This document shows, in pieces, positions 18,326 to 59,448 of a stretch of DNA of 64,000 nucleotides. The position numbers were made by a program, and so were the translations under genes. Below the pieces are notes generated by a model that was given only the letters and a program-made list of their open reading frames with translations, did no database searches and was not told the origin of the DNA. The stretch's first letter is position 1; each line of letters opens with the position of its first letter. Location of the stretch: IMG/VR virus record IMGVR_UViG_3300000553_000004, positions 150,734 to 214,733 of that record; one strand, 5' to 3'.

Positions 18326-19078
18326 TTAATGATGTTTTGGTTGTGGTAAAGTCAAAAGTAACCATTCTTTTTTCTTTCCAGTATGTTTTCTTATTCCCCT
18401 AACTAACAATCTTATACCAAAATAAGATAAATGTGGATTTTTAATACTAAAATGAAAACTTGTTCCTTCAAATTTCTCTTTGGTCAACCGATTATAGAAG
18501 ACGTGAACGGTTTTGTCTATAAATCGTTCTCTCATTTCACCCATAAGTTTTTTATTGGTTAAACTTATTTTTCTTTTGGTGTCTTCCGATACCACTTTCC
18601 CTTTAAGTTTATCTGATATTTTCTTTCTAATTTCAGTAGTGAAAACTTGTCGTTCGGCAAGAAAATTTTGGTTGTAACATTTATTCTGTTCCGTCTTGGC
18701 AATGTCAAGATATTTTTGTTCTACCAAGATTAGTTTGTCTATTGGAACTTTTTCAACCACTTGAAATATAAAGTTTTCTTCTCCATACTTGTTCCAAGAT
18801 GACTGTAAATGTGGATTGGTATGTCGGCTCTCTGTCAACATCGTTTGATGTTGTCTCCTTCTATTCCAAAAGTAGTTGGTTGACCCAACATAATATTTCC
18901 CATTAACCTTGTTTATTATCTTGTATATCCCTGACACTTTCTTTCTTTTTGTAATATCGTTGAAGGCTTTCCACTCGCATTCTGTCTTTGTTTTTTTCGT
19001 AAAATCTCTTTCCTCGTTCCCGATTTTGTTCTCTAATCTGTTCAACGGTGAGTCTGTTATTTCGTTTTGGCATATCAT
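18326..19078 (-). CDS. GIY-YIG homing endonuclease
   Basis: SGIYKIINKVNGKYYVGS…HxNxxLQ…WNKYG; NUMOD3-like repeats; start re-called at MICQ. Confidence 0.88.
   Translation of the reverse strand: MICQNEITDSPLNRLENKIGNEERDFTKKTKTECEWKAFNDITKRKKVSGIYKIINKVNGKYYVGSTNYFWNRRRQHQTMLTESRHTNPHLQSSWNKYGEENFIFQVVEKVPIDKLILVEQKYLDIAKTEQNKCYNQNFLAERQVFTTEIRKKISDKLKGKVVSEDTKRKISLTNKKLMGEMRERFIDKTVHVFYNRLTKEKFEGTSFHFSIKNPHLSYFGIRLLVRGIRKHTGKKKEWLLLTLPQPKHH
18903..19073 (-). CDS. small basic endonuclease-associated protein (overlapping, alternative frame)
   Basis: MPKRNNRLTVEQIREQNRERGKRFYEKNKDRMRVESLQRYYKKKESVRDIQDNKQG; homologues at 40496, 55456, 59407. Confidence 0.65.
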   Translation of the reverse strand: MPKRNNRLTVEQIREQNRERGKRFYEKNKDRMRVESLQRYYKKKESVRDIQDNKQG

Positions 19079-19246
19079 AATGTTCCTTTCAGATAATAAG
19101 TATGTTGTTGAACATCTAAACGTTAAGAAATCTTTGGAATTCATTTTTATATTGACGCTTGACTTCTTAAAACAATGGTATAGAATTTTGTCATAGTTAA
19201 AAACAACAACTACAACAAACAAACAAACAAAAACAAATAACAAACT

Positions 19247-19789
19247 ATGAAAAACAACAAACAAAACAAGTCGAATCGTAAAAGCATGAAGGGTCGTTGG
19301 GGGAAAGTCGGAGCCCCGCCCAAGGCCACCAAGTTCCCCCGTGGAGCGTTCACGATGGAATCCCTGTTCAACATGAACCAAAATCAGTGTGAGCTGTCCC
19401 TCCGCACCAAGGTGGATATCGGAGTGGAATCCGGCGCCCTCATCGCCCTCAAAGCCCGTAAACAAAAGGGTGGCGCCGTTGGTCGGCCGAAGGCGATTTT
19501 CATCCTGAAGGAAAATTTCGACGCCTCGAAACACGAACTGGCCCCGCCGAAGTCGACGAAGACCAAGGTTGTCAAGCCCCAGACCGTGGCTGTCGTTGAA
19601 GTCGCCCAGCCGACTGTGGCTCCCGTCGCCCCCGAGGCTCTGGCGCCGGTTGTCGAAACGATTGTCGAAGCGGTTGTCAATCAACCCGTTCCGGTGAATG
19701 AAGTGATTTCTACCGAACCGGCCGCCGCGCCCGCTGTGGTTCTCGCCCCCGTCACGGCCGAGACTCTCGTTGAAATGTTGGTGAGTTAA
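19247..19789 (+). CDS. putative winged-helix protein with A/V/P/E-rich tail
   Basis: FPRGAFT…GRPKAIF; C-rich codon usage; terminator at ~19811-19841. Confidence 0.65.
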   Translation: MKNNKQNKSNRKSMKGRWGKVGAPPKATKFPRGAFTMESLFNMNQNQCELSLRTKVDIGVESGALIALKARKQKGGAVGRPKAIFILKENFDASKHELAPPKSTKTKVVKPQTVAVVEVAQPTVAPVAPEALAPVVETIVEAVVNQPVPVNEVISTEPAAAPAVVLAPVTAETLVEMLVS

Positions 19790-19885
19790 TCCGACTCTGT
19801 TGTGACACAAGGCCCGCAGTTTAACGACTGTGGGTCTTTTTCTTGCGACGCTTGACAATTCTTAAATGTTTGGTAATCTACGTAT

Positions 19886-19947
19886 GGGTGGTTAGCTCAT
19901 TGGCAGAGCCCTTTGTATGATGGGTTCGATTCCCATACCATCCACCA
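19886..19947 (+). ncRNA. tRNA-like RNA lacking anticodon arm (G3-U70, A73, CCA)
   Basis: GGGTGGT/ACCATCC acceptor, GCTC/GAGC D arm, 10-nt linker, ATGGG-TTCGATT-CCCAT T arm, ACCA; own promoter. Confidence 0.75.
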
Positions 19948-20400
19948 ATTTTATGCTTGATATACGTCAACCAATGGAAACTCGCATTGAACGTCGTGAA
20001 CGGCGCAAGAATGAACGTCGTCGTACGCAGTTCAATGAACGCACTCGCACGTGTCATTCATGTGGTGGGACTGAGCGTTGGTGTACTTGCTGTGAAGTAT
20101 TTTCATGCTATGGTTCATGCAATGACGGATACGGAACTTGCCAGTGTTCGTAACGCTTGACTTGTGGTAAATTTCCTATAAATTAAAATCATGTTCAGGC
20201 TCGACTATAACGGCGGCGATGTTCAATGCCCACATTGTAAACAATCTTTTGGGATTGAATGGGATACTGAATATGGTGACCCGTTAATGAGCGACCAAAC
20301 AACCGAATGTCTTGAATGCAAGAAAACTTTCACATTTCAGGCTCTTTTAACCTATTCGACTTGGGCTTGACATTTTAATAATCTTTAGTATTCTCTTCAT

Positions 20401-21855
20401 ATGAGTTTTAACACTGACAATTTACTTGAACCGCAAAAACCACACGCCGAGTTACTTTCGGCCTCACTCGCCGCCAACGGTATTTCGTGGGATGCGTCTG
20501 GAACTGGTATGGGAAAAACGTTCGTTGGCGCCGCCATCGCTCGCCATCGCAATAAAAAGTTCGCCGTCATCTCTCCGAAGCTGAACATTCCGAAGTGGAA
20601 GGCGACGCTTGACACGTTCGGTATGAAACCCGAATTTATCATCAATTACGAAAAATTGGCCCGTGGTAACACGGATTACTATCACTATCGTACCAAGGGA
20701 ATGACCAAGCAGGAAGTCCCCCATTTTCTCCGTGGCGAATTCAAACTTCCCCGTGGTTGCAAAGACATGGAAATTTATTTCGACGAAAGCCACCGCATGA
20801 AAGGCTACGAGTCATTAAACGCTGGTTTACTCTACTCGGCAAGCGAACAGGGAATTCCGATTCACCTTATGTCTGCTACGCAGGCTATGACACCGCTTGA
20901 CATGCGAGCCTTTGGTTACGCCGCCGGTCTTCACAAGGGAATGAATCATGTGAAGCTTGATAACTTTGGGATGCGCAAGTTTAAATCGTTCATGGAAGAA
21001 GCGGGAGCAGAATATACCGGCCGTTGGGGTTCCATGTTTTTCGACTGTAATAAGCCGGAGTCAATCACAAAGTTGCAGGAAATTCGTCGCCAGTTGTTTG
21101 ACGTTAAAAAGATTGCCAGTCGCATGAAACGTGAAGACTTTGGTGACATCTTTCCTAATAATCAGATTGAATGCACGCCTTACGACATGGGTGCGAATGG
21201 CGACAAGATTTCCCGTGTGTATGAAGATATGCAGAATGAGCTTGCCAGATTGGAAAAATTCTCTGAAAACTATTCTCAACATATCTTCGCCGTCCTGACC
21301 AAGGCTCGCCGACTGGCCGAATTGTATAAGGTTCCTACTCTCTGTGAACTCGCCGAGGATATGATTGAAGAGGGCAAGTCTGTTCTCATCTTCGTCAACT
21401 ATACTGATAGTATCGACGCGCTTTATGCTCGTTTGTCAAAGGTTTTCGGCGAGGAAATGATTGGACGTATTTACGGTGGCCAGACATTCAACGCTCGCCA
21501 CTCCGACATCGCCGACTTTCAATCCGACAAAAAACGGATTATGCTTGCCAACCTCACCGCTGGTGGTGAATGTATTGATTTGCAAGACATTACGGGAAAA
21601 CATCCTCGGGTGTCTTTCATCAATCCCTCATATCGAGCCATCTCGGTTTTACAGTGTATCGGTCGCCATGACCGCGCAGGTGCAAAGTCTGATTGTCTCA
21701 CTAACTTAGTCTTAGCGCATGGGACAATTGAGTCAAGCGTTGGCGCCAAGTTCAACGGTAAAAAGGGACACTTGGATATTCTGAATGACGGTGACTTTGT
21801 ACCGGATGGGATTAGTTTCACGACGTCACGCATCGTCGCAGGAATGGATGTCTGA
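20401..21855 (+). CDS. superfamily 2 (SNF2-like) helicase/ATPase
   Basis: GTGMGKT, DESH, SAT, QCIGRHDRAG. Confidence 0.88.
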   Translation: MSFNTDNLLEPQKPHAELLSASLAANGISWDASGTGMGKTFVGAAIARHRNKKFAVISPKLNIPKWKATLDTFGMKPEFIINYEKLARGNTDYYHYRTKGMTKQEVPHFLRGEFKLPRGCKDMEIYFDESHRMKGYESLNAGLLYSASEQGIPIHLMSATQAMTPLDMRAFGYAAGLHKGMNHVKLDNFGMRKFKSFMEEAGAEYTGRWGSMFFDCNKPESITKLQEIRRQLFDVKKIASRMKREDFGDIFPNNQIECTPYDMGANGDKISRVYEDMQNELARLEKFSENYSQHIFAVLTKARRLAELYKVPTLCELAEDMIEEGKSVLIFVNYTDSIDALYARLSKVFGEEMIGRIYGGQTFNARHSDIADFQSDKKRIMLANLTAGGECIDLQDITGKHPRVSFINPSYRAISVLQCIGRHDRAGAKSDCLTNLVLAHGTIESSVGAKFNGKKGHLDILNDGDFVPDGISFTTSRIVAGMDV

Positions 21856-22830
21856 GGCTTGATTTTTGGTAAACATCGTATAAATTAAACCTATGTTTGA
21901 TAGAATCCATTTGACCAGAACCGAACAGGCCGTTTCAGATTCGTTGGCTCATGCCCGAATTCAACAGGATTACATACATGACACGTTGAGGGTGGTACAT
22001 CACGGCAGTAATGATTGGGACGGTGACGTGGATATTAACATCTATGAAGAACACGTTGCCGATGCTGTAAAGGTCGTTGAAGACCACACTGGTACAAAGT
22101 GTACGTCAACGTTTTTGAAAATCGGTAAGAAAACTGGCCGAAGGATTTGGAAAATCACCGCAAAGGGATACATCAATGGTCCGTGTGGCCACTACGCCCG
22201 AGTTGAATGGGAAAAGAAAAATGGAAAGCCGTATCCGATGGAACTTGTGGTCGAGGCTTGACGGTAAACAAATAACTGTTAGTATAACAATACAAAATTT
22301 ATGCCATGTCGTTGTGATTATCCCGATACGTGTAACGAGGACCCAGGTCTTCGTGATTCCGCCAACAAATCCACCCGCGCAGCTTGTGACATGAGGACAA
22401 TCCTCCGTCGTCACAATCTCGAACTTGAATTGACGCTCGAGACTCGGAAGTGGATTAAGAAACACGATGACAAAGATGCCGCTCGCATCGCCGTGGAAAC
22501 TCGGAAAGGGTTGCGTCAACGTGTCAAACAAGCCGCACTCGACAAGCTGAGTCTCGAAGAGCGCCGTGTGTTGGGGTTGTGAGGTATGAATCGTTACACC
22601 GAGTTGACCTGTAAGTTTTGGCCCCATTACAATATCACGGCAGGCTTAACAAACCTTGCCTTTTGGTTGCCATCTGTTATATATTGGACACCGCCGGTAA
22701 TATTTCCAATTATAACATCGTCAATGGGAATGCTTTGTGTCTATTGGGGAATACAGGGAATTCTACATCATCGTCACCAGCGTAAACAACGCTTGACTAA
22801 AAGTAATCCGTTGGTATAGTTATTTGTGTC

Positions 22831-22909
22831 GCGGATGTAGCTGAGTTGGATTTCAAGCAGTGGTTTTCTAAACCACGTTACGTGGGTTCAAATCCCACCA
22901 TCCGCACCA
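22831..22909 (+). tRNA. tRNA-Arg(UCU)
   Basis: Cloverleaf; GTGGT-TTTCTAA-ACCAC; CCA encoded. Confidence 0.9.
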
Positions 22910-22916
22910 ATTTTAA

Positions 22917-23015
22917 TGGCCTTTAGCTCAATGGCAGAGCAGAGCACTCACGCGGGCAGTTACGCCTGCATCGTTAATGCTTTGGTTGACAGTTCGAGTC
23001 TGTCAAGGCCAACCA
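22917..23015 (+). tRNA. tRNA (probably CAU, Ile2/Met) with 24-nt insertion in anticodon loop
   Basis: TGGCCTT/AAGGCCA acceptor, canonical D and T arms, 31-nt anticodon loop CTCA[24 nt]TAA. Confidence 0.75.
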
Positions 23016-23622
23016 TTTTATTATTAGGATAATGTAATTCCATGTGACAGTTATGACATAATAATTGACATTTATTAACTTCAATTTGTAATTTATTGAA
23101 GGAATATCCCGACATTTTTCTTAAATCCAATCCACTTTCTTTTTCATTTGGATTTTTGTGATGAAACGTTAATGCTGAATAATTTCTGTTGTATCCACAA
23201 TTACTACATTTACCACCCAATTGTTTAATAAAAAATAATTTTCGTTCAATCCCACGATTTTTATTTTTAGTATAATTATTTTTTTCATTTTGAAAATTAA
23301 ATTGACTTTTACTAACTTTATATGTTCCTTCACTCATCGCAATAGTTTTTAAGTTATACTTTTTTAACCAATATCTTATGTTTGTTTGAGAAGATGACAA
23401 CATTTTGGCTATTTGATATGTTGATTTGTTTTGATTTATTAACTCTTTTAATTTATCAAGTGGAATTTCAACGTGGTCATAAGGAGAATTTATTGTTTTA
23501 ATTCCAAGTTTTTTCATATATCGTTTTGTCGTAGTCACCGGCATATTCAATTCTTTGGCAATTTTATAGTATCCATATCCTTTTTTAGATAGTTCTTTAT
23601 ATTTTTCTATTAGATGCTCCAT
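22960..23622 (-). CDS. HTH + HNH homing endonuclease
   Basis: Two HTH-like repeats; CSNCGY…FHH…CQLLCHNCH. Confidence 0.85.
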   Translation of the reverse strand: MEHLIEKYKELSKKGYGYYKIAKELNMPVTTTKRYMKKLGIKTINSPYDHVEIPLDKLKELINQNKSTYQIAKMLSSSQTNIRYWLKKYNLKTIAMSEGTYKVSKSQFNFQNEKNNYTKNKNRGIERKLFFIKQLGGKCSNCGYNRNYSALTFHHKNPNEKESGLDLRKMSGYSFNKLQIEVNKCQLLCHNCHMELHYPNNKMVGLDRLELSTKALTMQA

Positions 23623-23952
23623 AGTTTAATTTATGTTTATACTCATAAGTAGTAAACTATGAACCAAAACAACAATAAATCCACGCTTGACATTATTTTA
23701 TTTTGGTTGTAATGTTTGGTATGGGAATCGAATACATAAAAGACGGAAATGGTCAAATCATTGGAAGTAAAAACGGCGACTGGATTAGAGATAAATCGGG
23801 TCGCCAAATTGCCCGTTTCAATGAAGGAACAAATCAGACTTTGACGGCTGATGGTAAGAGATTCGGACAAGGCAATCAATTGACGGCCGCCTTGAAGTCA
23901 AAAGGAAAATAACGACGCTTGACATTTTTGGTTTCTTTGTTAGTATGTATTT

Positions 23953-24330
23953 GTTGTTCGTAAGTAAAGAATTGGTGAAAACCAGAGTGTTGAAAGCGAA
24001 CAAACTGGTCGGTCTGAGATGAACGGTAAGAGTCACTTAAATCATGTGATGTTTCCGTTCTGTACTGGTAGAGCCCGTAGATTGGTCCGATACGGCTACA
24101 AATTTGGCCTCTTGTTCCACCCTCAATGGGTGTTGGTGAAAGTCATCACGACTCCTTTGTTGGGGTTTTAACAATGCTGATAATTTTTGGTGAATGAAAC
24201 CCCGCGGGGTGGAGTTCGCAAATTGGCCTCTTGTTTCATCATCCTCAATGGGTGGTGATGGTGTAAGAAAACATGAAGACCTTCGGTTTAAGAAGGGATA
24301 ACAAAGCTAATTCGATTTCCCGAAAGGGGC
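23953..24330 (+). ncRNA. candidate structured ncRNA with internally duplicated motif
   Basis: Own promoter 23917-23946; no credible ORF; aaat(t)tggcctcttgtt + TCAAT-loop hairpin occurs twice. Confidence 0.55.
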
Positions 24331-24363
24331 TTGACAGACTAAGAAGTTCTGTTAAGATAAGTT

Positions 24364-24610
24364 TGTTCCGTGACTGAGTAACTGCTACTGTTAGCAGTAA
24401 GGTGATGGCAGGGTGAAGAATCCTGTTAGACACGAAAGTAACTCGGAGTAGGTAAGGCAGAGAAACTGATGGGTCGTACAACCGTTGAGGTTTTTCGTAG
24501 ACACGTATATATGCTATAACAGCGTGTCTTAGGTGGCGACGGCTGCCAGCTGGCTGAATAACCGAAAGAGTGAGGATAGTCGAGAGTAACAAGCGAGTCT
24601 CTCCGGAACA
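24364..24610 (+). ncRNA. candidate structured ncRNA
   Basis: Own promoter at 24329; ends pair (tgttccg/cggaaca); internal hairpins. Confidence 0.55.
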
Positions 24611-24672
24611 TTAAATTTCAACGCTTGACAACGGGTCAAGTCGTGGTAAGATAGTTTTGTTGGTTTTAGGAT

Positions 24673-24756
24673 TGCGGAGACAAGCCGAGGGACGCTGGCC
24701 ACGCTCATAACGTGGGTTAATAACTATGAATGGTTCGACTCCATTCTCCGCTACCA
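24673..24756 (+). tRNA. atypical tRNA-Met(CAU), initiator-like 1:72 mismatch
   Basis: GCGGAG/CTCCGC with T.T at 1:72; CCACG-CTCATAA-CGTGG; aberrant D arm, long variable region. Confidence 0.7.
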
Positions 24757-39802: not shown

Positions 39803-40501
39803 TCATATTGTAACCAGCCCCGATGAAAGACTCTGGGTCTGGTTTTTTTTCTTTTTATGGGCAAGACTCATTTTAAGTCTTGTTTCTGCTGAACGTTTCT
39901 TTCCCCAATGTGGACTATTAGGACCTGTGTTTACATTTCTTAAATGTTCTTTTTCATTTTCTGTTAGTTTTCTATGTGGTGAAGAATTAGACATTTTTAA
40001 TTTGACTTCATCGGAATATTTTTTGCCTATTTTGGCAATAGACATTTTCTCTCTTGCATAATCACTAAAAAATTGTTCGGTTGATTCAAATTTTAGATTG
40101 TAACATTTGTCTTGTTCATTTCTGGCAATGTCAAGATATTTTTGTTCTACTAATATTCTTTTATTAGGTTCGGTAATTTCTACTATTAGAAATTCAAAAT
40201 TATCCTTACCATATTTATTCCACGCACGCTGTAAGTAATCATTATAGTGTTTATTTTCAATTAAACAATTCTTATGTTCTCTCCATCGTCGTTGAATACT
40301 ATTAGCACTTCCAACATAATACTTGCCATTAGTCTTGTTTACTATCTTGTAAATTCCCGATACGTTTCTTTTCGTGGTAGTCGGCAAGTTTTTCTTTTCT
40401 AATTCTGTCTTTGTGTCGTTCGTAAAATCGTTTGGCACGTTCATTGTTTCGTTTTCTTTGTTCGTCAAGTGTAAGTTTGTCGTTTCGTTTTGGCATATCA
40501 T
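39803..40501 (-). CDS. GIY-YIG homing endonuclease
   Basis: SGIYKIVNKTNGKYYVGS; NUMOD3-like repeats. Confidence 0.88.
   Translation of the reverse strand: MICQNETTNLHLTNKENETMNVPNDFTNDTKTELEKKNLPTTTKRNVSGIYKIVNKTNGKYYVGSANSIQRRWREHKNCLIENKHYNDYLQRAWNKYGKDNFEFLIVEITEPNKRILVEQKYLDIARNEQDKCYNLKFESTEQFFSDYAREKMSIAKIGKKYSDEVKLKMSNSSPHRKLTENEKEHLRNVNTGPNSPHWGKKRSAETRLKMSLAHKKKKNQTQSLSSGLVTI
40329..40496 (-). CDS. small basic endonuclease-associated protein (overlapping)
   Basis: MPKRNDKLTLDEQRKRNNERAKRFYERHKDRIRKEKLADYHEKKRIGNLQDSKQD. Confidence 0.65.
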   Translation of the reverse strand: MPKRNDKLTLDEQRKRNNERAKRFYERHKDRIRKEKLADYHEKKRIGNLQDSKQD

Positions 40502-40559
40502 AAGTTATCCTTTCATTTAATAAGTATAATATGAAATTTGATAACGATAGAAAATTTAC

Positions 40560-49978: not shown

Positions 49979-50370
49979 GGGCTCGTAATGGTTTCGACAT
50001 GATGTTGAAGATAAACGAAGCACGCCGAGGATGTTATCAGGACTCGTAAAAAGATAACAAAAACATAAATGCTAACCTTAACCGTTTGGCCAACCTCGAT
50101 TTTTCATTCTCGGTGAATGAAGTTGAGGTCGCAGTAGCTTAATAACTACTCCGTCGCACTGACCGACTTCCTCTAAGTTGGATGTGGCGTAAAATAGAGG
50201 AAGAACTGCTTGTAGTTTAAATTATAAGACTGATACGAAAGGCCAGTATGCCAATCTATGACATGTAGGTTGTTCATTACCGATAATGTCGAATTCACCA
50301 AAATGAAATAAGCGTGTAGCGTCGGTTGTTAGATATGTTATGGACGTTGGTTCAACTCCAACCGAGTCCA
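49979..50370 (+). ncRNA. ssrA: tmRNA
   Basis: 5' GGGCTCG…TTCGAC; tag ORF 50071-50142 ANLNRLANLDFSFSVNEVEVAVA*; 3' GGAC-GTTGG-TTCAACT-CCAAC-CGAGTCC-A with G3-U70. Confidence 0.92.
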
Positions 50371-51927: not shown

Positions 51928-51972
51928 TTCCAGTATTGACATCACACTAAAATTGTGGTAGTATAGGTTGTT

Positions 51973-52879: not shown

Positions 52880-53263
52880 ATGAATCCTCTGGCTCAAAAA
52901 TGGGATAAGACAGGTCTGTTAGATGGAATGACAGACTTTAGAAAAAATGGATGTGCAGTGATTCTGGAAGATGTTGCTAGAATATTAATTGAAACAACTC
53001 CTAAAGAAAATAAAGAACGGTCAAGACATGAACATTTTTGTGGTTACATATTGCCTATGGTTAAAGTAGGGTATAATTTGTTATATCCACAAAAATTTCC
53101 TGATGTTGTTGTCTTTGTAAAAGACTTTGAGGAATTTTTTAATAAAAATGAATCAGTGACCGAAGTTTTAAAATCATCCTCAAATGAGGATGTAGATGTA
53201 TTTTGTGAATTGTATGAACCGTATTTTATCAAAACGTTTATGAAACTTAGAATGGCAGAATGA
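52880..53263 (+). CDS. protein resembling N-terminus of gp23-type major capsid protein
   Basis: LAQKWDKTGLLDG…AVILED.A..L…ILPMV. Confidence 0.5.
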   Translation: MNPLAQKWDKTGLLDGMTDFRKNGCAVILEDVARILIETTPKENKERSRHEHFCGYILPMVKVGYNLLYPQKFPDVVVFVKDFEEFFNKNESVTEVLKSSSNEDVDVFCELYEPYFIKTFMKLRMAE

Positions 53264-53264
53264 T

Positions 53265-54008
53265 ATGAACGCATTTGTAAAAACAACCAATGGTAAGTTT
53301 CCCAATCCAAACTTTTGTTATGCTTGGAAGGGGCTTACCGAACTGCAATACAATGTAATTACATTTGAAGACGCCGACTTACAAGACCCGTCTTTCTGGA
53401 TGAGTTGCAATAGAACCACGCCGGTTTTTGCCGGCGTAATTGTATTCGATGAAATCTTGGAGAAATTAGGGGTCGATTACAAAAAGATTGACACCTATCC
53501 TACCATCCTACGTTCATATCTCAATCGTTATGTCGAGAAAACCACACTTGGAGAGTATAGAAAAGTGTGGGACAAAGATGAAGATAATCGTCCTCTTATG
53601 TTCATGAAACCCATTAAACAGAAACAGTTTAACGGTAGAGTCATGAAAAGTATTCTTGATTGGATTTGTATGACTAAATTTGCCGATGATACGGAAGTTT
53701 ACATTTCCGAGCCTGTTAATTTTCTCACCGAGTATAGAGTCTATATTCGTAATGGTAAAATTCTACTTGGAAGAAACTATCGCGGTGATTGGACAAAAGG
53801 CATAGACATTAATGTGGTTAAAGATGCAGTGGAAACATTTGCAGATGAAGCCCCTTGCGCTTATGCTTTGGACTTTGGGTTGACTGATGATGGTAAAACA
53901 TCCTTGGTAGAATTCAATGATGCAACCAGTCTTGGAAATTATGGATTGGATGCTGTAAACTTCGCTGATATGATTGTCAGTAGATGGGTTGAGATTTGTA
54001 ATCCATGA
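53265..54008 (+). CDS. ATP-grasp (R2K-like) protein
   Basis: FMKP..QKQFNG, SEPV.F.TEYRVY, YALDFG, LVEFND. Confidence 0.8.
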   Translation: MNAFVKTTNGKFPNPNFCYAWKGLTELQYNVITFEDADLQDPSFWMSCNRTTPVFAGVIVFDEILEKLGVDYKKIDTYPTILRSYLNRYVEKTTLGEYRKVWDKDEDNRPLMFMKPIKQKQFNGRVMKSILDWICMTKFADDTEVYISEPVNFLTEYRVYIRNGKILLGRNYRGDWTKGIDINVVKDAVETFADEAPCAYALDFGLTDDGKTSLVEFNDATSLGNYGLDAVNFADMIVSRWVEICNP

Positions 54009-54258
54009 ACGATACAAAGCCACAATGTTCTGTCTGTAACTGGACCGATTACGAAGGTGATTGGGGAGGTTGTAGATGGATTAGAGGGTTTAGAACTGTA
54101 TGTCCTGAATGTAAAAGACATTTTAGTGGATGTCATGATGCTCCAATATTGAGTGACCCACATCCATTTTTGGCTCACCGATTTAAAAGAAGAAATAGTT
54201 GGTGGTCAAAATTTAAAAAGAAATTCTTGGATGTTATAGACATGCTAGGATATTATCC

Positions 54259-54732
54259 ATGAAATATAAATTAATTAATAAGACTAAGATTTCTACAAAT
54301 GTTCTTAAAACGTTGATAGAGTTGGCTGCTCCAAAAGGAATTGATGAAGTCGACATTTCAATAAAATATGATTATTCTGGAGAGTCGGCTTGGCATGCAG
54401 TGGCATATGCATTTAAGAAAAAGAAATCCATTAATTTGTGGATAATGGATGGAGATTTAAACCTACCTAAATATAGTAACCCGTCTGCCTTAAAAAAGGT
54501 CGGTTATAGTCCCAGATTTTTAATTAAAAACCAAAATGAAGTATTAGTATCTCTGCTAGCTCATGAACTTAGGCACATATGGCAAGGAAATGTCAGTAAA
54601 CAGAATTTCTTAAAAAGTAAATTACACTATTACAAATCTTGGGATGGACTGACATATTCTAGCGTATATAAAATGGAATTAGATGCATGTAAATATGCAA
54701 AAAAAATATTAGACAAATATAGAAAATTATGA
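54259..54732 (+). CDS. putative zincin metallopeptidase
   Basis: LAHELRHIWQ…E.DA. Confidence 0.65.
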   Translation: MKYKLINKTKISTNVLKTLIELAAPKGIDEVDISIKYDYSGESAWHAVAYAFKKKKSINLWIMDGDLNLPKYSNPSALKKVGYSPRFLIKNQNEVLVSLLAHELRHIWQGNVSKQNFLKSKLHYYKSWDGLTYSSVYKMELDACKYAKKILDKYRKL

Positions 54733-55335
54733 TGTGTTTCGCATTTTATTTACAAATTGTAGAACTTCTTCTTTTGAATAATCATGTTTCGCAAAGTTTA
54801 TTCCTTGACAAACAAACTCTGCATTTCCTTTGATATATCCTTTTGATGAATCAATTCTATCTAAACTTGCCTTTTCTATTGAACGACATTTTCTAAAACT
54901 TAATTTGCTTTCTGGAAGTATCATTTTAATACCAGTATAAGGACATTTGCCGTTTTGAAATTCCCACAATTCTTTTAGAAAGTCTATATCTATATTAGAT
55001 TCCCACGAACCTCGATTCTTACTTTTATCTACAAAATATCCAAATGGAGATTTTCCTGTTTTATGTATATCATAACAAGATTTATTACAATAATGAATTC
55101 CTTTATTTTCTCTATGACGTGATGTGTATTTTCCACGTTTCATTTCAAATTCTTTACCGCATCCATTACATTTCACCTTTATCATTGTGATTGGTCTAAA
55201 ATAATTTAATTTACAAGTTCCACTACAAAAATGTCGTCCATTTCTCTCTTTTAGAGTATTTAAAAATACTTTACGAGATTTTTCAAATTGCTTATTACAT
55301 ACCATACAATTAACACTTATTATTTGATTTTTCAT
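54727..55335 (-). CDS. Zn-finger + HNH-like homing endonuclease (paralogue of 50392)
   Basis: CPYTG…ASLDRIDSSKGY. Confidence 0.8.
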   Translation of the reverse strand: MKNQIISVNCMVCNKQFEKSRKVFLNTLKERNGRHFCSGTCKLNYFRPITMIKVKCNGCGKEFEMKRGKYTSRHRENKGIHYCNKSCYDIHKTGKSPFGYFVDKSKNRGSWESNIDIDFLKELWEFQNGKCPYTGIKMILPESKLSFRKCRSIEKASLDRIDSSKGYIKGNAEFVCQGINFAKHDYSKEEVLQFVNKMRNTS

Positions 55336-55456
55336 AATAATTTTTTAAATTTTTCTTTCTTATTTGTTTTTTATTTCGTCGGTAATACCGCATTGATTTT
55401 TTGCAATTCGCTTGACGTTTTTCTTCTTCTGTGTTATATTTTTTATGTCTTCCCAT
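55310..55456 (-). CDS. small basic endonuclease-associated protein
   Basis: MGRHKKYNTEEEKRQANCKKSMRYYRRNKKQIRKKNLKNYYEKSNNKC. Confidence 0.65.
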   Translation of the reverse strand: MGRHKKYNTEEEKRQANCKKSMRYYRRNKKQIRKKNLKNYYEKSNNKC

Positions 55457-55513
55457 ATACAATAAATAGTGAAATGGAAAGAAAAAGTAATAAAAAAGTA
55501 ATAAAATAATTTT

Positions 55514-56380
55514 ATGTTAGGTGCTATTATCGGCGATATAGTAGGCTCTCCGTATGAAGGGTCTTCTTTAAATTGGGTGGATGATAAATCATTCCCTCTA
55601 TTTGCAAATGAACTTTCGAGATTCACAGACGACACAATCTTGACCTGCGCTACCGCAGACGCATTATTGAAAATCAGTGATAATAGATGTGATGATAACA
55701 CAGAGTCGTTGATGTCAATGGATAAGATATTTGCCGAGAAATACATAGAATGGAATTTAAAATATCCTGGTCGTGGATATGGAAGTGGATTTCAACAGTG
55801 GGTTGATAACGGTGGAATCGACATAAATCCAAGTTATGCAAATGGATGTATGATGCGTTGTAGTCCAATACCGTTATTTTATATAGATTCATATATGGCA
55901 AGATATACGGCATATGATAGTATTAAAATGACACATAATTCTCCTGAATCGCATCGAGGCGTATGTTCAATCGTGTCTGCTATTCATATGGCTTTACAAG
56001 GTTCTACCAAACTTCAAATCAAAGCTTATGTAGAAGAACAATTCGGTCATATGTTAGATTTAACGGTAGAACAATGGAGAGAACATCCTAAGACTTCGAT
56101 TAGGTGTAATCTCTCAGCTCCACAATCATTAGTATGTTTTATGGAATCTACTGATTATGAATCTACCATCAGAAATGCCGTTTATACTAAAGGTGATACT
56201 GATACTACTGCTGCAATTGCCGGTTCTATTGCAGAAGCTTTCTACGGAGTTAAGTCGATTCCACAAGAGATGATTGATGGAGCTAAATCGAGAATGACGC
56301 CTGAGATGATAGAATTGGTAAATAAATATTATTCAATAATTGGGGAACGTAGAGAACAATATAAAGGATTTAAAATATGA
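55514..56380 (+). CDS. ADP-ribosylglycohydrolase (DraG/ARH family)
   Basis: GAIIGD..GS.YE, FTDDT, NG.MMR, GDTDTTAAIAG. Confidence 0.92.
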   Translation: MLGAIIGDIVGSPYEGSSLNWVDDKSFPLFANELSRFTDDTILTCATADALLKISDNRCDDNTESLMSMDKIFAEKYIEWNLKYPGRGYGSGFQQWVDNGGIDINPSYANGCMMRCSPIPLFYIDSYMARYTAYDSIKMTHNSPESHRGVCSIVSAIHMALQGSTKLQIKAYVEEQFGHMLDLTVEQWREHPKTSIRCNLSAPQSLVCFMESTDYESTIRNAVYTKGDTDTTAAIAGSIAEAFYGVKSIPQEMIDGAKSRMTPEMIELVNKYYSIIGERREQYKGFKI

Positions 56381-56913
56381 AATATGTAAAAACATTAACA
56401 TTAATAACATTCACGTCGTTATTAACTGCAACCGCAGCCCCATCAACCAATCTTTTATCATCTACAAAAAGTGATATAGGACTTTGGGCATTTTCATTTA
56501 GTGGCAAAGGCAATTCAACTCTAAACAATACTCATACGAATAACAATTCCACGGTCGGTGTAGAATTTCAAATTGGTTATAATACCAAACTTATTCTTCC
56601 TACGGAAGTCGGAGTTCGTCAGTCAATTGGATATTCAAATTCAAAAGTAGAATCTTGGAATTTATCGACTAAAGTATATTCCGATTGGAATGTTATTAGA
56701 GTTGGTAATCTAGAAACGGATGCCGGAGCAAATTTCGGCGTATCGTATGGAAGTCAAGTTGGTGATTGGAGTATTTCTCCTGAAATTATCGGTAGACTTT
56801 ATTTAAAGAAGGATGTAGATTTATTTTGTAGAATTGAATATCCATACGACCTCACCTATGGTTCCTTTCAGAACAATTTAGCGTATAATTTTGGATTGCG
56901 ATTGCGGTTTTAG
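56377..56913 (+). CDS. outer-membrane beta-barrel-like protein
   Basis: Signal peptide, amphipathic strands, C-terminal YNFGLRLRF. Confidence 0.7.
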   Translation: MKYVKTLTLITFTSLLTATAAPSTNLLSSTKSDIGLWAFSFSGKGNSTLNNTHTNNNSTVGVEFQIGYNTKLILPTEVGVRQSIGYSNSKVESWNLSTKVYSDWNVIRVGNLETDAGANFGVSYGSQVGDWSISPEIIGRLYLKKDVDLFCRIEYPYDLTYGSFQNNLAYNFGLRLRF

Positions 56914-57067
56914 AAGTTCAAAAACGGTTACAATTAAAATTAAATAAGAGTTGACTTTTTCACTAACTCTGATATAGTTATTTACATGAAGAACAAACAA
57001 ACATAGGTTACTACAAACGACGATAACATCGCCTTCGTAATTTCTTTGTCTTCATATCTTCCTTTAT

Positions 57068-57143
57068 ATCCCATTAACTCAGCGGCCAGAGTGATGCTCT
57101 CTAAAAGCTTTCGTCATCGGTTCGAATCCGATATGGGATACCA
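57068..57143 (+). tRNA. amber suppressor tRNA (CUA)
   Basis: 76-nt cloverleaf, loop CT-CTA-AA with CTA at 57101-57103 (positions 34-36), CCA encoded. Confidence 0.85.
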
Positions 57144-57154
57144 ATTTTCTTTAC

Positions 57155-57209
57155 GGTCGAGATATACATTCAGTGTGTTCTTTTGGCTCAAGACCAAACT
57201 CGACCACCA
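57155..57209 (+). ncRNA. 55-nt tRNA-like RNA lacking anticodon arm
   Basis: GGTCGAG/CTCGACC-A-CCA, one small hairpin, TTTGG-CTCAAGA-CCAAA T-like arm. Confidence 0.65.
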
Positions 57210-57216
57210 TTTTAAC

Positions 57217-57294
57217 GGTCTGATAGCTCAATTGGCAGAGCGCTGGGAGGATAAAACCGACCGGAGGTTAGAGGTTCAAGTCCTTTTCAGACCA
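57217..57294 (+). tRNA. tRNA-like gene with aberrant extended anticodon arm
   Basis: Canonical acceptor, D, T arms; anticodon arm CTGG-GA-GG-ATAAAA-CC-GA-CCGG. Confidence 0.65.
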
Positions 57295-57361
57295 CTTTTT
57301 AAATATTAATAGAATACGAACTTGACGTTTTCGAATTTTGTGTTATAGTTATTGACAGTAA

Positions 57362-57446
57362 GCGAGTGTGATGTAATTGGCAGCCATCCGAGTCTTAGAA
57401 ATTCGGGGAGAAATCCGTGTAGGTTCAAATCCTATCACTCGTACCA
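57362..57446 (+). tRNA. tRNA-Leu(UAG)
   Basis: CT-TAG-AA loop, long variable arm, CCA. Confidence 0.9.
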
Positions 57447-57452
57447 ATTTAC

Positions 57453-57528
57453 GGGGTCTTAGCTCATCTGGTAGAGCGTCTGATTTGCATTCAGAAGGTG
57501 GCGAGTTCGAGTCTCGCAGGCTCCACCA
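57453..57528 (+). tRNA. tRNA-Ala(UGC)
   Basis: G3-U70, TT-TGC-AT loop, CCA. Confidence 0.93.
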
Positions 57529-57650
57529 AATTTTGGTGATTTAATAAAATCATCTGGTGGAATGGACAGTTTAACTGCTCCCAGTTTGTCGGTGTCGAAT
57601 AACCGACTATTTTCATAGGAAGTTTCAATAAATTCTTCATATTTATACGC

Positions 57651-58055
57651 ATGGAACACATTAAATCAAAACGTCCATTTGTAAAAATCTGCGCATATTG
57701 TCAGGGCATAAATAAACCACAGATGTCGAATTTCTCCACGGGTATAGATTCTAAAGTTAAAGATGAGATGAAACAGGTTGATGCTCAAGTAAAATCCAAA
57801 TCCGATGAATTAACATTTAGTCATGGAATTTGTGAACCACATTTAATACAAACATTACAAGAAATTCCTGGAATGACAAAAGAACGTATTAATTCTATGG
57901 TCAGTAAATTGACTGACTCGGCGCCGTGTTTATTAAATAATGACCAACTCCGACATTCTTACATGCGTGGTATATTTACGCCAGAACAGGTGAAACAGGT
58001 CCAACAATCAAATCAACATTTGACGGAACGATTTAAAAAACTTGCCGGAATCTAA
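57651..58055 (+). CDS. hypothetical protein
   Basis: CAYC, SHGICEPH, C-terminal RFKKLAGI; upstream ATATTTATA. Confidence 0.7.
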   Translation: MEHIKSKRPFVKICAYCQGINKPQMSNFSTGIDSKVKDEMKQVDAQVKSKSDELTFSHGICEPHLIQTLQEIPGMTKERINSMVSKLTDSAPCLLNNDQLRHSYMRGIFTPEQVKQVQQSNQHLTERFKKLAGI

Positions 58056-58277
58056 TCCTGAGTTATAATACAGTCCATGTTCACTAATGAATTGTCAGGA
58101 TTGTTTATCCCACTTATTATATATGGAATAATTGTAGGCATACTTTTATGTGGAGTTGGCGCCGGTGGATGTGTATTAATCCATCATTACAAAATTTCCA
58201 TAGAAGAACGTCAATCCAATGCCGTGATAGTAACAAACGTAGTATACGTTACAAATTCAATTTCAAAATAATTTAAT

Positions 58278-58574
58278 ATGTCACTAAAAATGGAACAATG
58301 TGTATTTTGTAAATTAACCACGTTAACCCGTGGACATCATATTATCCCAAAATGCAAATCAGGTACAACCATCGTACAGACATGCGAGAGTTGTGAATCA
58401 TTTATTCATTCCACTTGGACGCACAATGAATTAAGAGACGTCTATAATACAGTAGAAAGTATAATTGAAAACGAAAAGTTTGAAAAATTCTTAAAGTGGA
58501 GATGGAAACAGCCTGTGACCACAGTATTCAAATCTACTCTCGGTAAATCCAGAGATAAAAATAAATATCATTGA
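58278..58574 (+). CDS. small HNH endonuclease
   Basis: CVFC…HHIIPK…CESC..FIH. Confidence 0.75.
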   Translation: MSLKMEQCVFCKLTTLTRGHHIIPKCKSGTTIVQTCESCESFIHSTWTHNELRDVYNTVESIIENEKFEKFLKWRWKQPVTTVFKSTLGKSRDKNKYH

Positions 58575-58587
58575 ATATGGACACAAT

Positions 58588-59448
58588 TTAATATATTAAT
58601 TTCCATCCTTTCGTTTGTTTAATTTTATTTTTAATAAGTAACCATACACAACTATGATGTAAATCATATTTTATTCTAAAATCAAAACGAGTTCCTGTAA
58701 ATACTTCGCCTGTATATTGATTTTTAAAAGTATATATAGTTTTGTTATATTGAGAATGATTGTGACCAGAGCATTTATTTTTAATTTTATCTATAACACA
58801 TTGAAGACGTTTCTTTCCTTTCCATATAGATGAGAGACTAGATTTTGTTTGGTTTGAATGATGTTTTCCTAAAAATGGAGGATTGAGTTTATTATTTTTT
58901 ATCAATTGATTTAGATGGGGTATTGAATGAATTCTGCCTTTGTTGCTATTACTTATTTTCTTTTTTATTTCATCGGTCATATCTACTCTATCAGAGATAA
59001 ATGATATATTATAGCATTTACTTCTTTCTGTTTTAGCCATATCCAAATATTTTTGTTCTGTGTCTTTTAGTGTTTTGAAGTTTGCTGTTGTTTGCTCTAT
59101 TATTAGAAAATTAAAATTATTTTTACCGTGTTTATTCCACGAATTTTGAAGATAATTATTTTTGTGGTTGTTTTTATTTAAATGATAAATATGATTACTT
59201 CGTCTTTTATGAAAATTTTTTGTTGAACCAATATAATACTTACCATTAATTTTATTTATTATCTTGTAAATTCCGCTTACCTTTGTGGTATCGTTCGAGA
59301 TTTTCTTTTTTAATTCTTCTTTTGTGTCGGTTATAATACCGCATACGTCTAATTCTCCACTGCTCTCGGATTTCATCTGTGGTTCTATTAAGTTTTTTTC
59401 TCCCCATATAACATTTTCTTTTTTGATTGTTGACATTTCTCCGTTCAT
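58588..59448 (-). CDS. GIY-YIG homing endonuclease
   Basis: SGIYKIINKINGKYYIGS; NUMOD3-like repeats; start uncertain. Confidence 0.88.
   Translation of the reverse strand: MNGEMSTIKKENVIWGEKNLIEPQMKSESSGELDVCGIITDTKEELKKKISNDTTKVSGIYKIINKINGKYYIGSTKNFHKRRSNHIYHLNKNNHKNNYLQNSWNKHGKNNFNFLIIEQTTANFKTLKDTEQKYLDMAKTERSKCYNISFISDRVDMTDEIKKKISNSNKGRIHSIPHLNQLIKNNKLNPPFLGKHHSNQTKSSLSSIWKGKKRLQCVIDKIKNKCSGHNHSQYNKTIYTFKNQYTGEVFTGTRFDFRIKYDLHHSCVWLLIKNKIKQTKGWKLIY
59252..59407 (-). CDS. small basic endonuclease-associated protein (overlapping)
   Basis: MGRKKLNRTTDEIREQWRIRRMRYYNRHKRRIKKENLERYHKGKRNLQDNK. Confidence 0.65.
   Translation of the reverse strand: MGRKKLNRTTDEIREQWRIRRMRYYNRHKRRIKKENLERYHKGKRNLQDNK

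What the first reader, a model, noticed from the sequence alone, without database searches (positions are those of the whole stretch)
18903..59407. A conserved ~50-aa basic ORF overlaps four homing endonuclease genes in a different frame
Seen: MPKRN/MGR(K/H)K…(F/Y)Y.(R/K)(N/H)K..(I/M)…L..Y ORFs at 19073-18903, 40496-40329, 59407-59252 and 55456-55310 (all minus strand). The endonuclease is always in the +1 frame. For the three GIY-YIG genes both frames are open across the whole small ORF, and two share an ATGATATG double start behind one GAAAGGA SD. The small-ORF frame looks better conserved than the annotated GIY-YIG N-termini. The same module precedes an unrelated HNH-like gene. Inference: a portable regulator/inhibitor of toxic endonucleases, or the true N-terminus joined by a +1 frameshift near the A-rich RY(Y/H)xK codons.
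Basis: partly seen in the sequence, partly recalled or inferred. Interest (0 to 1): 0.75.

Follow-up and report, generated by a model that had tools for sequence, protein, structure and literature searches.

The report
Small gene overlapping homing endonuclease starts
An unannotated gene for a highly basic protein of about 50 residues lies out of frame inside the first part of many phage homing-endonuclease genes, and because selection keeps both reading frames intact and each has its own start codon, this is most likely a pair of overlapping genes and not one gene joined by a ribosomal frameshift.

Summary
The four small ORFs exist as described. The same 214.7-kb phage record holds two more copies. 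A profile of the ORFs finds 177 protein clusters, almost all 44-60 residues long, and more than 100 loci in uncultivated, mostly large freshwater phages. One complete 354-kb genome carries 12 copies.

The module is exactly 41 codons in 58 of 60 representatives. It is conserved as protein only in its own frame. AlphaFold models it as a basic N-terminal arm followed by one long helix.

A nuclease ORF always follows in the +1 frame. These ORFs fall into ten unrelated families, and the module shuffles freely among them.

The frameshift idea is not supported:
- The +1 frame stays open across the whole small ORF in 44 of 60 representatives, against 2.2 expected.
- Every locus has a +1-frame ATG placed just where that frame opens.
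- There is no shared slippery site and no RNA structure at the junction.
- One locus has a +1 stop right after the junction.
- In-frame fusions are rare, and the two read at DNA level are truncated.

Best reading: two overlapping genes are expressed from one cassette promoter, probably on leaderless or near-leaderless mRNA. The small protein's function is unknown. I infer that it binds nucleic acid and helps control the cassette's expression.

The parts
18903..19073 (-). Small ORF copy 1 (56 aa, MPKRN subtype). The 41-codon core is followed by a tail that is the other-frame reading of the GIY-YIG motif VSGIYKIINK.
18326..19078 (-). GIY-YIG homing-endonuclease ORF 1. It is in the +1 frame relative to small ORF 1, and its ATG lies 5 nt upstream of the small ORF's ATG (class B).
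   Evidence: (PF01541, 1.2e-6)
19095..19102 (-). Promoter-like box TACTTATT of cassette 1, 16 nt upstream of the nuclease-frame ATG.
40329..40496 (-). Small ORF copy 2 (55 aa, MPKRN subtype).
39803..40501 (-). GIY-YIG + NUMOD3 homing-endonuclease ORF 2. It is in the +1 frame, with its ATG 5 nt upstream of the small ORF's ATG (class B).
   Evidence: (PF01541 3.6e-11; NUMOD3 2.5e-8)
40519..40526 (-). Promoter-like box TACTTATT of cassette 2.
59252..59407 (-). Small ORF copy 3 (51 aa, MGRKKLNRT subtype).
58588..59448 (-). GIY-YIG homing-endonuclease ORF 3 in the +1 frame. Its ATG lies 41 nt upstream of the small ORF's ATG and 4 nt after the box (class B). Residues 1-53, the stretch read across the small ORF, are modelled as disordered.
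59453..59460 (-). Promoter-like box TATTTATA of cassette 3.
55310..55456 (-). Small ORF copy 4 (48 aa). It is the first ATG after the box (class C).
54727..55335 (-). HNH/EndoVII-like endonuclease ORF in the +1 frame. Its ATG at 55335 is formed by TAT-GAA of the small ORF's YYE motif. The +1 frame is closed until 9 nt before this ATG, and the overlap with the small ORF is 26 nt.
   Evidence: (phrog_3322 2e-22)
55461..55468 (-). Promoter-like box TATTTATT of cassette 4, 4 nt before the small ORF's ATG.

Best explanation
Each cassette is a free-standing homing-endonuclease gene whose 5' end also encodes, in another frame, a separate small protein. That protein has a basic N-terminal arm (MGRKK/MPKRN) followed by one helix of about 34 residues, and its 41-residue core carries a net charge of about +9.

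Shown here:
- The small frame is under protein-level selection.
- The nuclease (+1) frame over the same DNA shows no protein-level selection, yet is kept free of stop codons.
- The nuclease frame always has its own ATG.
- The small-ORF head and the nuclease body recombine freely at the junction.

Inferred:
- Both proteins are made from one transcript that starts a few bases after a TAYTTATW box, so the mRNA is leaderless or nearly so, in a system that does not use Shine-Dalgarno sequences.
- Both are made by alternative initiation at two nearby AUGs in different frames. The nuclease AUG comes first in class B, and the small-ORF AUG comes first in classes A and C.
- The constant +1 relation is a by-product of inheritance. 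Any nuclease body joined to the head must stay in frame with the head's nuclease-frame ATG. In class C the ATG can arise only in the +1 frame, from TAT-GAR of the YYE motif.
- The nuclease's N-terminal leader is a disordered spacer that exists only because the small gene lies there.

Most speculative step: the small protein binds nucleic acid and, together with competition between the two overlapping starts, sets the dose or timing of the nuclease. This would be a generic safety catch that works for any nuclease domain.
For: Small-frame coding:
- A profile search finds 177 clusters, and about 139 of the best 150 hits are at most 100 aa long and start at residue 1.
- The core is exactly 41 codons in 58 of 60 representatives. 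Nucleotide entropy is highest at codon position 3 and lowest at position 2. Pairwise identity is 0.51 against 0.32 and 0.33 in the other two frames.

The nuclease frame is translated from upstream:
- It is open across the small ORF in 44 of 60 representatives against 2.2 expected (maximum 6 in 300 synonymous randomisations), with 22 stops observed against 157 expected. The +2 control frame is never open.
- In class B, all 150 risky Leu/Ile/Val contexts use the codon that avoids a +1 stop, although 55% of such contexts make a +1 stop in the nuclease bodies.

The nuclease has its own start:
- Class B: 42 of 44 have a +1-frame ATG upstream of the small ORF's ATG.
- Class A: 10 of 10 have an early internal +1 ATG, against 12 of 44 in class B (p=2.7e-5).
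- Class C: the ATG lies at the YY|E site in 4 of 6, against 1 of 54 elsewhere (p=1.5e-4).
- L041 then begins MKISGIYKI, a canonical GIY-YIG N-terminus.

The leader is dispensable:
- AlphaFold gives pLDDT 31-40 for residues 1-53 of the copy-3 nuclease and above 95 for the GIY-YIG domain.
- Three GIY-YIG genes in the same genome lack the module and have the box directly before their ATG.

Promoter and leaderless mRNA:
- The TAYTTATW box is followed by an ATG 3-6 nt downstream about 27 times in the genome, including at non-endonuclease genes.
- There is no SD enrichment.
- In the cassettes, the first ATG after the box is in the nuclease frame (31 loci) or the small frame (17 loci).

Shuffling: there are ten nuclease-body families. 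Small-ORF identity is 0.50 within a family and 0.49 between families, and cross-family pairs reach 78%.

Fold: the small protein is modelled as a single helix spanning residues 10-43, with mean pLDDT 89. The core's mean net charge is +9.1.
Against: - There is no direct evidence of transcription or translation. No RNA run was listed, and the family is absent from cultured phages.
- The transcription start is inferred from a sequence motif only.
- In class B the small ORF's AUG is internal, 5-50 nt from the presumed 5' end, with no obvious ribosome-binding signal. How it is used is unknown.
- The strict +1 rule (a long ORF in 80 of 87 unique loci, never in +2) is also what a frameshift model predicts.
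- Three natural in-frame fusions exist: L012, L086 and P0083/P0153. A fused product is therefore not absurd.
- The functional claim rests only on composition, a single-helix model and the lack of co-variation with nuclease type. No family match supports it.
Confidence: 0.7

Rival explanations
1. Programmed +1 ribosomal frameshift. Ribosomes start at the small ORF's ATG, translate the 41-residue basic helix and then slip +1 near the Y(Y/H/W)xxK codons. The real endonuclease would carry the module as an N-terminal DNA-binding domain, and the 50-aa product would be the non-shifted by-product.
For: - The nuclease is in the +1 frame in all six genomic copies and in 80 of 87 unique related loci, and never in +2.
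- The nuclease domain begins within about 3-10 codons of the end of the module.
- A Lys codon is common three codons after Y(Y/H/W).
- Rare in-frame fusions exist. L086 reads YWKK-WTKKCPDC, exactly where a shift would join the frames.
- Some downstream ORFs carry in-frame repeats of a similar YYxxNKE motif.
Against: - The +1 frame is kept open over the whole small ORF, which a junction frameshift does not need.
- A nuclease-frame ATG is present in 60 of 60 representatives, and its position co-varies with where the frame opens.
- The junction codons share no slippery or hungry-codon pattern. Examples are AAG-CGG, AAA-GAA, AAA-CGT, AAC-GTG and AAA-TCA.
- There is no downstream RNA structure (z from -0.67 to +1.2), and the genome makes no use of SD sequences.
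- L110 has a +1 stop two codons after the conserved Lys.
- L041 and copy 4 start the nuclease at an ATG inside YYE, with the +1 frame closed just upstream.
- In-frame versions are very rare among 177 clusters, and the two read at DNA level (L012, L086) are truncated.
- Similarity of the module to the in-frame repeats is not significant (hhalign E 0.06-0.16).
Confidence: 0.1
2. The small protein is a dedicated inhibitor (immunity or antitoxin-like partner) that binds its cognate endonuclease and neutralises it.
For: It is tightly linked to nuclease genes and almost never found alone. Every cassette keeps its own diverged copy, with up to 12 per genome. The nuclease leader has the opposite charge to the small protein: -2.5 against +9.1.
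Against: - The partners belong to ten unrelated nuclease-body families: GIY-YIG subtypes, HNH/EndoVII-like, Zn-ribbon/NUMOD3 types, a PD-(D/E)xK-like type and a repeat type.
- Small-ORF similarity is no higher within a family (0.50) than between families (0.49).
- Class C nucleases lack the leader that could serve as a common docking site.
- Module-less GIY-YIG genes coexist in the same genome.
Confidence: 0.1
3. The small ORF acts only in cis, as a translated leader (a uORF-like attenuator or arrest peptide). The act of translating it matters and the peptide itself has no role in trans.
For: It overlaps the nuclease start region in every arrangement, so ribosomes in one frame must interfere with initiation in the other. 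The first codons are nearly invariant at the nucleotide level (ATGGGAAGAAAA in most loci).
Against: - Protein-level conservation runs along the whole 41 residues, with a fixed length and a confident helix.
- Conservation is strongest at the N-terminus and not at the C-terminal, tunnel-proximal end, unlike known arrest peptides (background knowledge).
- The module keeps its sequence whether it lies upstream of, downstream of, or 121 nt away from the nuclease start.
Confidence: 0.08

Closest known systems
Overprinted (out-of-frame embedded) phage genes, such as the MS2 lysis gene over coat/replicase, phiX174 E within D, and lambda Rz1 within Rz (from general knowledge)
   Same: A short gene lies in another frame inside a longer one. 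Both frames are maintained, one of them carries little sequence constraint over the shared stretch, and expression is coupled because the starts lie on one mRNA.
   Different: Here the embedded gene is the conserved partner, and the host gene's overlapping part is a dispensable spacer. The small-ORF head is portable among ten unrelated nuclease bodies, and the start-codon order varies (classes A, B and C). No embedded gene linked to homing endonucleases turned up in three keyword searches of the paper library or in Pfam or PHROGs.
IS1 / IS3-family insertion sequences: a small basic OrfA (InsA) regulator overlapping the catalytic orfB, with OrfAB made by a -1 frameshift (from general knowledge)
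   Same: A selfish DNA element encodes a short basic protein, presumed to bind DNA, at the 5' end. This ORF overlaps the ORF for the DNA-cutting enzyme, and the arrangement limits production of the enzyme.
   Different: The frame relation is +1, not -1. No A-AAA-AAG-type slippery heptamer or stimulatory structure is conserved. The nuclease has its own ATG and an open frame upstream. No fused product is required.
prfB (RF2)-type programmed +1 frameshifting (from general knowledge)
   Same: A short zero-frame ORF is followed by the main coding part in the +1 frame.
   Different: There is no conserved shift codon, no in-frame stop at the shift site and no upstream SD-like stimulator. In-frame orthologues are not common, and the +1 frame is open and ATG-initiated upstream.
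Expression control of T4-type free-standing and intron-encoded endonucleases, such as I-TevI autorepression and delayed translation, or mobE (from general knowledge)
   Same: Phage homing-endonuclease genes carry their own promoters and are kept at low or late expression. This suggests what the small gene could be for.
   Different: Those systems use the nuclease's own DNA-binding domain or mRNA hairpins. None is known to use a separate overlapping small protein.
Basic-helix DNA binders (bZIP basic region, AT-hook arm)
   Same: The protein has a long basic helix preceded by a GRKK-type arm. One related ESM-Atlas cluster has AT_hook in 14% of its members.
   Different: There is no significant Pfam match to bZIP or AT_hook. 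The spacing of the conserved N, R and aromatic residues differs from the bZIP signature, and no leucine zipper is present.

Membership tests
Programmed +1 ribosomal frameshift gene | A conserved shift site (a slippery P-site codon and/or a hungry or stop A-site codon) at the frame junction | tested here: not met
   The junction codons of 28+ loci were aligned on the Y(Y/H/W) motif and share no common heptamer. Several have no re-pairing possibility, for example AAG-CGG, AAC-GTG and GAA-AAT.
Programmed +1 ribosomal frameshift gene | A stimulatory element: an upstream SD-like sequence or a downstream RNA structure | tested here: not met
   Folding 91 nt from the junction in all six genomic copies gives z-scores from -0.67 to +1.2. 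The genome shows no SD usage.
Programmed +1 ribosomal frameshift gene | The downstream frame has no independent start and need not be open upstream of the shift site | tested here: not met
   The +1 frame is open across the small ORF in 44 of 60 representatives against 2.2 expected. A +1-frame ATG is present in 60 of 60 and is positioned where the frame opens.
Programmed +1 ribosomal frameshift gene | The trans-frame protein is detected | not testable with these tools
   No RNA or proteomic data are available: no RNA run was listed.
Overlapping (overprinted) gene pair | Both frames are free of stops over the shared stretch more often than synonymous randomisation allows | tested here: met
   (+1 frame: 22 stops against 157 expected; +2 control frame never open)..
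Overlapping (overprinted) gene pair | Protein-level purifying selection on the embedded ORF | tested here: met
   Pairwise identity is 0.51 against 0.32 and 0.33 in the other frames. Third-position entropy is the highest. The core has a fixed length of 41 codons. There are 177 clusters of stand-alone small proteins.
Overlapping (overprinted) gene pair | Each ORF has its own initiation codon | tested here: met
   The small ORF has an ATG at the canonical position in 24 of 27 loci that were found with patterns not including the start. For the nuclease-frame ATGs.
Overlapping (overprinted) gene pair | Both products are actually made | not testable with these tools
   This needs Ribo-seq, MS or reporters.
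GIY-YIG homing endonuclease (the genes that are overlapped) | GIY-YIG catalytic domain, with or without NUMOD3 DNA-binding repeats | tested here: met
   PF01541 matches at 1.2e-6, 3.6e-11 and 4.8e-8, and NUMOD3 at 2.5e-8. AlphaFold gives pLDDT above 95 for the domain.
Toxin-antitoxin or nuclease-immunity pair | The partner protein is specific for, and co-evolves with, its nuclease | tested here: not met
   Small-ORF identity is 0.50 within nuclease families and 0.49 between them. Pairs of up to 78% identity sit on unrelated nucleases.
bZIP / AT-hook DNA-binding proteins | A significant match to the family profile | tested here: not met
   No Pfam hit at or below E 0.01 for any of the four small ORFs. 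The resemblance is in composition and fold only.
NUMOD-type nuclease-associated DNA-binding modules | A match to the NUMOD1, NUMOD3 or NUMOD4 profiles | tested here: not met
   No such hit for the small ORFs. NUMOD3 is found only in the nuclease bodies.

The most novel reading that the evidence does not exclude
The small protein is a new, universal accessory factor of free-standing homing endonucleases. It would be a trans-acting binder of DNA or RNA (or of a host factor) that, together with dual-frame alternative initiation on a leaderless mRNA, forms a self-contained and transferable expression switch. Bolted onto any nuclease domain, this switch would turn it into a tolerated mobile element. 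The shared head would also supply homology through which cassettes exchange nuclease bodies.
Probability: 0.3. Interest if true: 0.8.

Novelty: new variant of a known kind. Interest (0 to 1): 0.62.

Why it matters
Homing endonucleases are the main mobile genes of large phages, yet how a phage tolerates a dozen DNA-cutting genes is poorly understood. This work defines an unannotated small-protein family with at least 177 clusters and up to 12 copies per genome. The family is welded, out of frame, onto the starts of endonuclease genes from ten unrelated families.

It is a clean natural case of dual coding. One frame is selected for its sequence, and the other only for being open. The case also has an unusual property: the dual-coded head is a portable module.

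Practical consequences:
- Automatic gene callers either miss the small gene or give the nuclease an N-terminal extension of about 50 residues that is modelled as disordered and is not conserved.
- If the protein sets nuclease dose, it is a compact, nuclease-independent control element.
- The finding gives a concrete, testable system for alternative initiation on SD-less, possibly leaderless, phage mRNAs.

Tried and rejected
- Pfam and PHROGs scans of the small ORFs gave nothing significant.
- A tblastn search of cultured phage genomes found no match, and megablast of the region also found none.
- The ESM Atlas returned only unnamed small viral clusters.
- Three literature searches found no description of this arrangement.
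- hhalign of the module against the in-frame YYxxNKE repeat arrays of some downstream ORFs was not significant (E 0.06-0.16). Homology to those repeats is therefore not claimed.
- I looked for an RNA structure that could stimulate frameshifting and found none.
- Transcriptional slippage was rejected because no homopolymer run is conserved in position. Copy 2 has no A-run longer than 4.
- A shift or hop at the small ORF's stop codon was rejected because that stop lies downstream of the GIY motif.
- Expression evidence was sought, but no RNA run was listed. DNA contigs from four freshwater runs only confirmed the sequence and showed no presence/absence joints.
- An empty-site comparison using a flanking gene found no homologue in five related phage records.
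- A scan of cellular genomes gave only two short MAG contigs, so no host could be assigned.
- The first all-against-all clustering of nuclease bodies merged everything into one family and was redone with stricter settings.
- An oddly shaped tRNA gene in the window was checked as a possible frameshift-suppressor tRNA. Its loop does not match the junction codons.

Full report
**1. What is in the window**

They align over about 50 residues with invariant M1, T9, R14, R23, Y25, K29, L37 and Y40.

Three of them lie inside the 5' part of GIY-YIG endonuclease ORFs (PF01541; NUMOD3 in copy 2). The fourth overlaps by 26 nt the start of an HNH/EndoVII-like endonuclease ORF (phrog_3322, 2e-22). In all four the nuclease is in the +1 frame. 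Copies 1 and 2 share ATGATATG.

The window is the last 64 kb of a 214.7-kb IMG/VR virus record, estimated to be 62% complete. A profile of the four ORFs finds two further copies elsewhere in that record. One lies in front of another GIY-YIG gene. The other lies in front of a 270-aa Zn-ribbon plus PD-(D/E)xK-like homing endonuclease (phrog_559, phrog_3339). Both nucleases are again in the +1 frame. Window genes such as Mom, GP88, an R2K ATP-grasp enzyme and an RNA ligase mark the record as a large bacteriophage.

**2. How widespread it is**

A profile search of 1.84 billion representative proteins returns 177 clusters at E<=1e-3. About 139 of the best 150 are at most 100 residues long, start at residue 1 with MGRKK or MPK, and carry no annotation. 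Many end in KRN(L/I)Q(D/N)N, which is the other-frame reading of the GIY-YIG strand SGIYKI(I)N. The overlap is therefore conserved well beyond this genome.

Two scans of IMG/VR gave 107 loci, 87 of them unique. One complete 353.8-kb phage has 12 copies. Cultured phages have none. Cellular genomes contribute only two short MAG contigs. The runs that hold the window are freshwater metagenomes, and their contigs reproduce the two cassette junctions laid (copies 3 and 4) without indels.

**3. The regularities**

- In 80 of 87 unique loci a long ORF (147-395 residues beyond the small ORF's stop) lies in the +1 frame, and the +2 frame never exceeds 61 residues. Most of the exceptions are visibly truncated nuclease genes, and one is cut by a contig end.
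- The downstream bodies fall into ten families that are unrelated by BLAST. They include several GIY-YIG subtypes, HNH/EndoVII-like proteins, Zn-ribbon + NUMOD3 proteins, a KYDYSKV-repeat type (phrog_559) and a YYxxNKE-repeat type.
- The module from Met to Y(Y/H/W) is exactly 41 codons in 58 of 60 representatives that share less than 80% identity. Mean pairwise identity is 0.51 in the small frame, 0.32 in the +1 frame and 0.33 in the never-open +2 frame. Nucleotide entropy is highest at the small frame's third codon position.

The small frame is therefore a protein-coding frame. The nuclease frame, over the same DNA, carries no detectable amino-acid constraint.

**4. Frameshift or two genes?**

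The decisive test was synonymous randomisation. I kept each small ORF's amino-acid sequence and drew codons from the usage of the same loci's nuclease bodies. Under this null, the +1 frame should be stop-free across the module in 2.2 of 60 representatives (maximum 6 in 300 trials). It is stop-free in 44. Total +1 stops number 22 against 157 expected, while the +2 frame is never open (237 stops against 333 expected). In those 44 loci all 150 Leu/Ile/Val codons that could create a +1 stop use a safe synonym, whereas 55% of such contexts in the nuclease bodies do create one. A frameshift at the end of the module would not need this. A nuclease ORF that starts upstream would.

Start codons agree with the two-gene reading.
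- Class B (44 representatives): 42 have a +1-frame ATG 5-50 nt upstream of the small ORF's ATG.
- Class A (10 representatives, +1 frame closed at about +19 to +40): all ten have a +1 ATG at +28 to +40, against 12 of 44 in class B (p=2.7e-5).
- Class C (6 representatives, +1 frame closed until about +100 to +140): the ATG is created by TAT-GAR of the YYE motif in 4 of 6, against 1 of 54 elsewhere (p=1.5e-4). The other two have an ATG just after the last stop.

In L041 the ATG at the YYE site gives MKISGIYKI, a textbook GIY-YIG N-terminus. In L110 a +1 stop follows the junction directly, so a shift there is impossible.

The other predictions of a frameshift also fail.
- Junction codons share no slippery or hungry-codon pattern.
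- No RNA structure follows the junction.
- Long A-runs are not conserved in position.
- In-frame fusions are very rare. L012 and L086 are truncated, and P0083/P0153 is an HNH fusion that keeps only the first 29 residues of the module.

I conclude that a programmed +1 frameshift is unlikely to be the way the nuclease is made. A minor trans-frame product cannot be excluded.

**5. The leader and the promoter**

The part of the nuclease read across the small ORF is modelled as disordered. For copy 3, pLDDT is 31-40 for residues 1-53 and above 95 for the GIY-YIG domain. The same genome has three GIY-YIG genes without the module. The leader therefore looks like a spacer that exists because the small gene lies there.

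Upstream of every cassette there is a TAYTTATW box, with a TTGAC-like element about 18 nt further up. In the genome as a whole this box is followed by an ATG 3-6 nt downstream about 27 times, including at ordinary genes. Long ORFs show no Shine-Dalgarno enrichment and have T at position -1 in 71% of cases. I infer sigma70-type promoters that give leaderless or near-leaderless mRNAs in an SD-independent system. This is inference from sequence alone.

In the cassettes, the first ATG after the box is in the nuclease frame in 31 representatives and in the small frame in 17. The order of the two starts therefore differs between cassettes, but both always lie close to the presumed 5' end or within the module.

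**6. The small protein**

AlphaFold, run with a 37-sequence alignment, gives one helix spanning residues 10-43 (mean pLDDT 89) behind an extended basic arm. The core has a mean net charge of +9.1. No Pfam, PHROG or Atlas family names it. Weak hits to Agaricales hypothetical proteins share the N-terminal motif but say nothing about function.

Small-ORF similarity is the same within and between nuclease families (0.50 against 0.49), and pairs of up to 78% identity sit on unrelated nucleases. This argues against a nuclease-specific inhibitor. It argues for a generic role tied to what all cassettes share: their DNA, their mRNA 5' end and their mode of expression.

It also shows that head and body recombine at the junction, which explains the constant +1 relation. 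A new body must stay in frame with the head's nuclease-frame ATG, and in class C the ATG can only arise in the +1 frame from TAT-GAR.

**7. Mechanism proposed, and how sure**

- Two overlapping genes with independent initiation: about 0.7-0.75.
- Leaderless or short-leader transcript from the box: about 0.5.
- The small protein binds nucleic acid and tunes nuclease dose or timing, with competition between the overlapping starts contributing: about 0.35.

The closest analogy in logic is the small basic OrfA/InsA of IS1 and IS3 elements, but without the frameshift. The closest analogy in anatomy is the classical overprinted phage genes. No description of such a gene on homing endonucleases turned up in three keyword searches of the paper library.

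**8. Verdict**

The frameshift interpretation is not supported. The regulator idea is plausible but untested. The feature is a new small-protein family in a new, portable dual-coding arrangement. The kind of arrangement (overlapping genes) is known, but this variant is not.

Noticed in passing
whole genome G000; in the window e.g. 55461-55468(-), 59453-59460(-), 19095-19102(-), 40519-40526(-): The box TAYTTATW is followed by an ATG 3-6 nt downstream about 27 times in the 214.7-kb record, including at non-endonuclease genes. A TTGAC-like element often lies about 18 nt upstream, and a direct repeat of that element often sits in the spacer. Long ORFs have no SD enrichment and have T at -1 in 71% of cases. 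This suggests leaderless mRNAs and SD-independent initiation.
   Followed up: partly
window 57068-57143 (+): A tRNA with anticodon CUA (amber-suppressor type, labelled tRNA-Pyl by ARAGORN) sits in a cluster of tRNA genes. TAG may be recoded in this phage. None of the six small ORFs of this genome ends in TAG.
   Followed up: no
window 57217-57294 (+): A tRNA gene (Rfam tRNA, 52.5 bits) has an enlarged anticodon arm, with 14 nt where the model expects 9. ARAGORN calls it tRNA-Phe(AAA). I checked it as a possible frameshift-suppressor tRNA, but its loop (AUAAAA) does not match the Lys-rich junction codons.
   Followed up: partly
window 49979-50370 (+); 22831-24756; 61893-62713: A phage-encoded tmRNA gene and 13 tRNA genes in all, including three tRNA-Arg (UCU, ACG, UCG) and three tRNA-Thr.
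   Followed up: no
G000:C1 around 77463-77746(-), 89759-90029(+), 17099-17405(-) (outside the window): Three GIY-YIG endonuclease genes lack the small-ORF module. The promoter-like box sits directly before their ATG. One of them begins MNIISGIYK.
   Followed up: partly
L012 1438-1644; L086 1501-1845; proteins P0083/P0153: Rare in-frame versions exist. L012 and L086 read the module straight into a W.K.C..C zinc ribbon but stop soon after, so they are probably decayed genes. P0083/P0153 fuse the first 29 residues of the module to an HNH domain.
   Followed up: partly
L033 1348-1638; protein P0149: The small ORF is fused in frame to the 3' end of an upstream truncated GIY-YIG gene. This indicates tandem or nested endonuclease cassettes.
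   Followed up: no
window 59427-59810 (+): A small stand-alone GIY-YIG (URI/UPF0213-like) gene diverges from cassette 3, and its longest ORF overlaps the 5' end of the cassette-3 nuclease ORF. Two ADP-ribosylglycohydrolase paralogues (55514-56380 and 59807-60721) flank cassettes 3 and 4.
   Followed up: no
proteins P0098, P0122, P0131, P0132, P0150: Hypothetical proteins of Agaricales mushrooms (Pholiota, Collybia, Moniliophthora, Marasmiellus, Candolleomyces) begin with a similar motif, MPR..LY.T.EE.R.AN..KS.RYY.R.K. The profile hits are weak (E about 1e-4), so this could be homology or convergence.
   Followed up: no
window 18326-19858 (-): The 510-aa TTG-initiated ORF listed here is an artefact of an open frame running antisense through the gene at 19247-19789 (+). 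The real nuclease ORF starts at 19078.
   Followed up: yes
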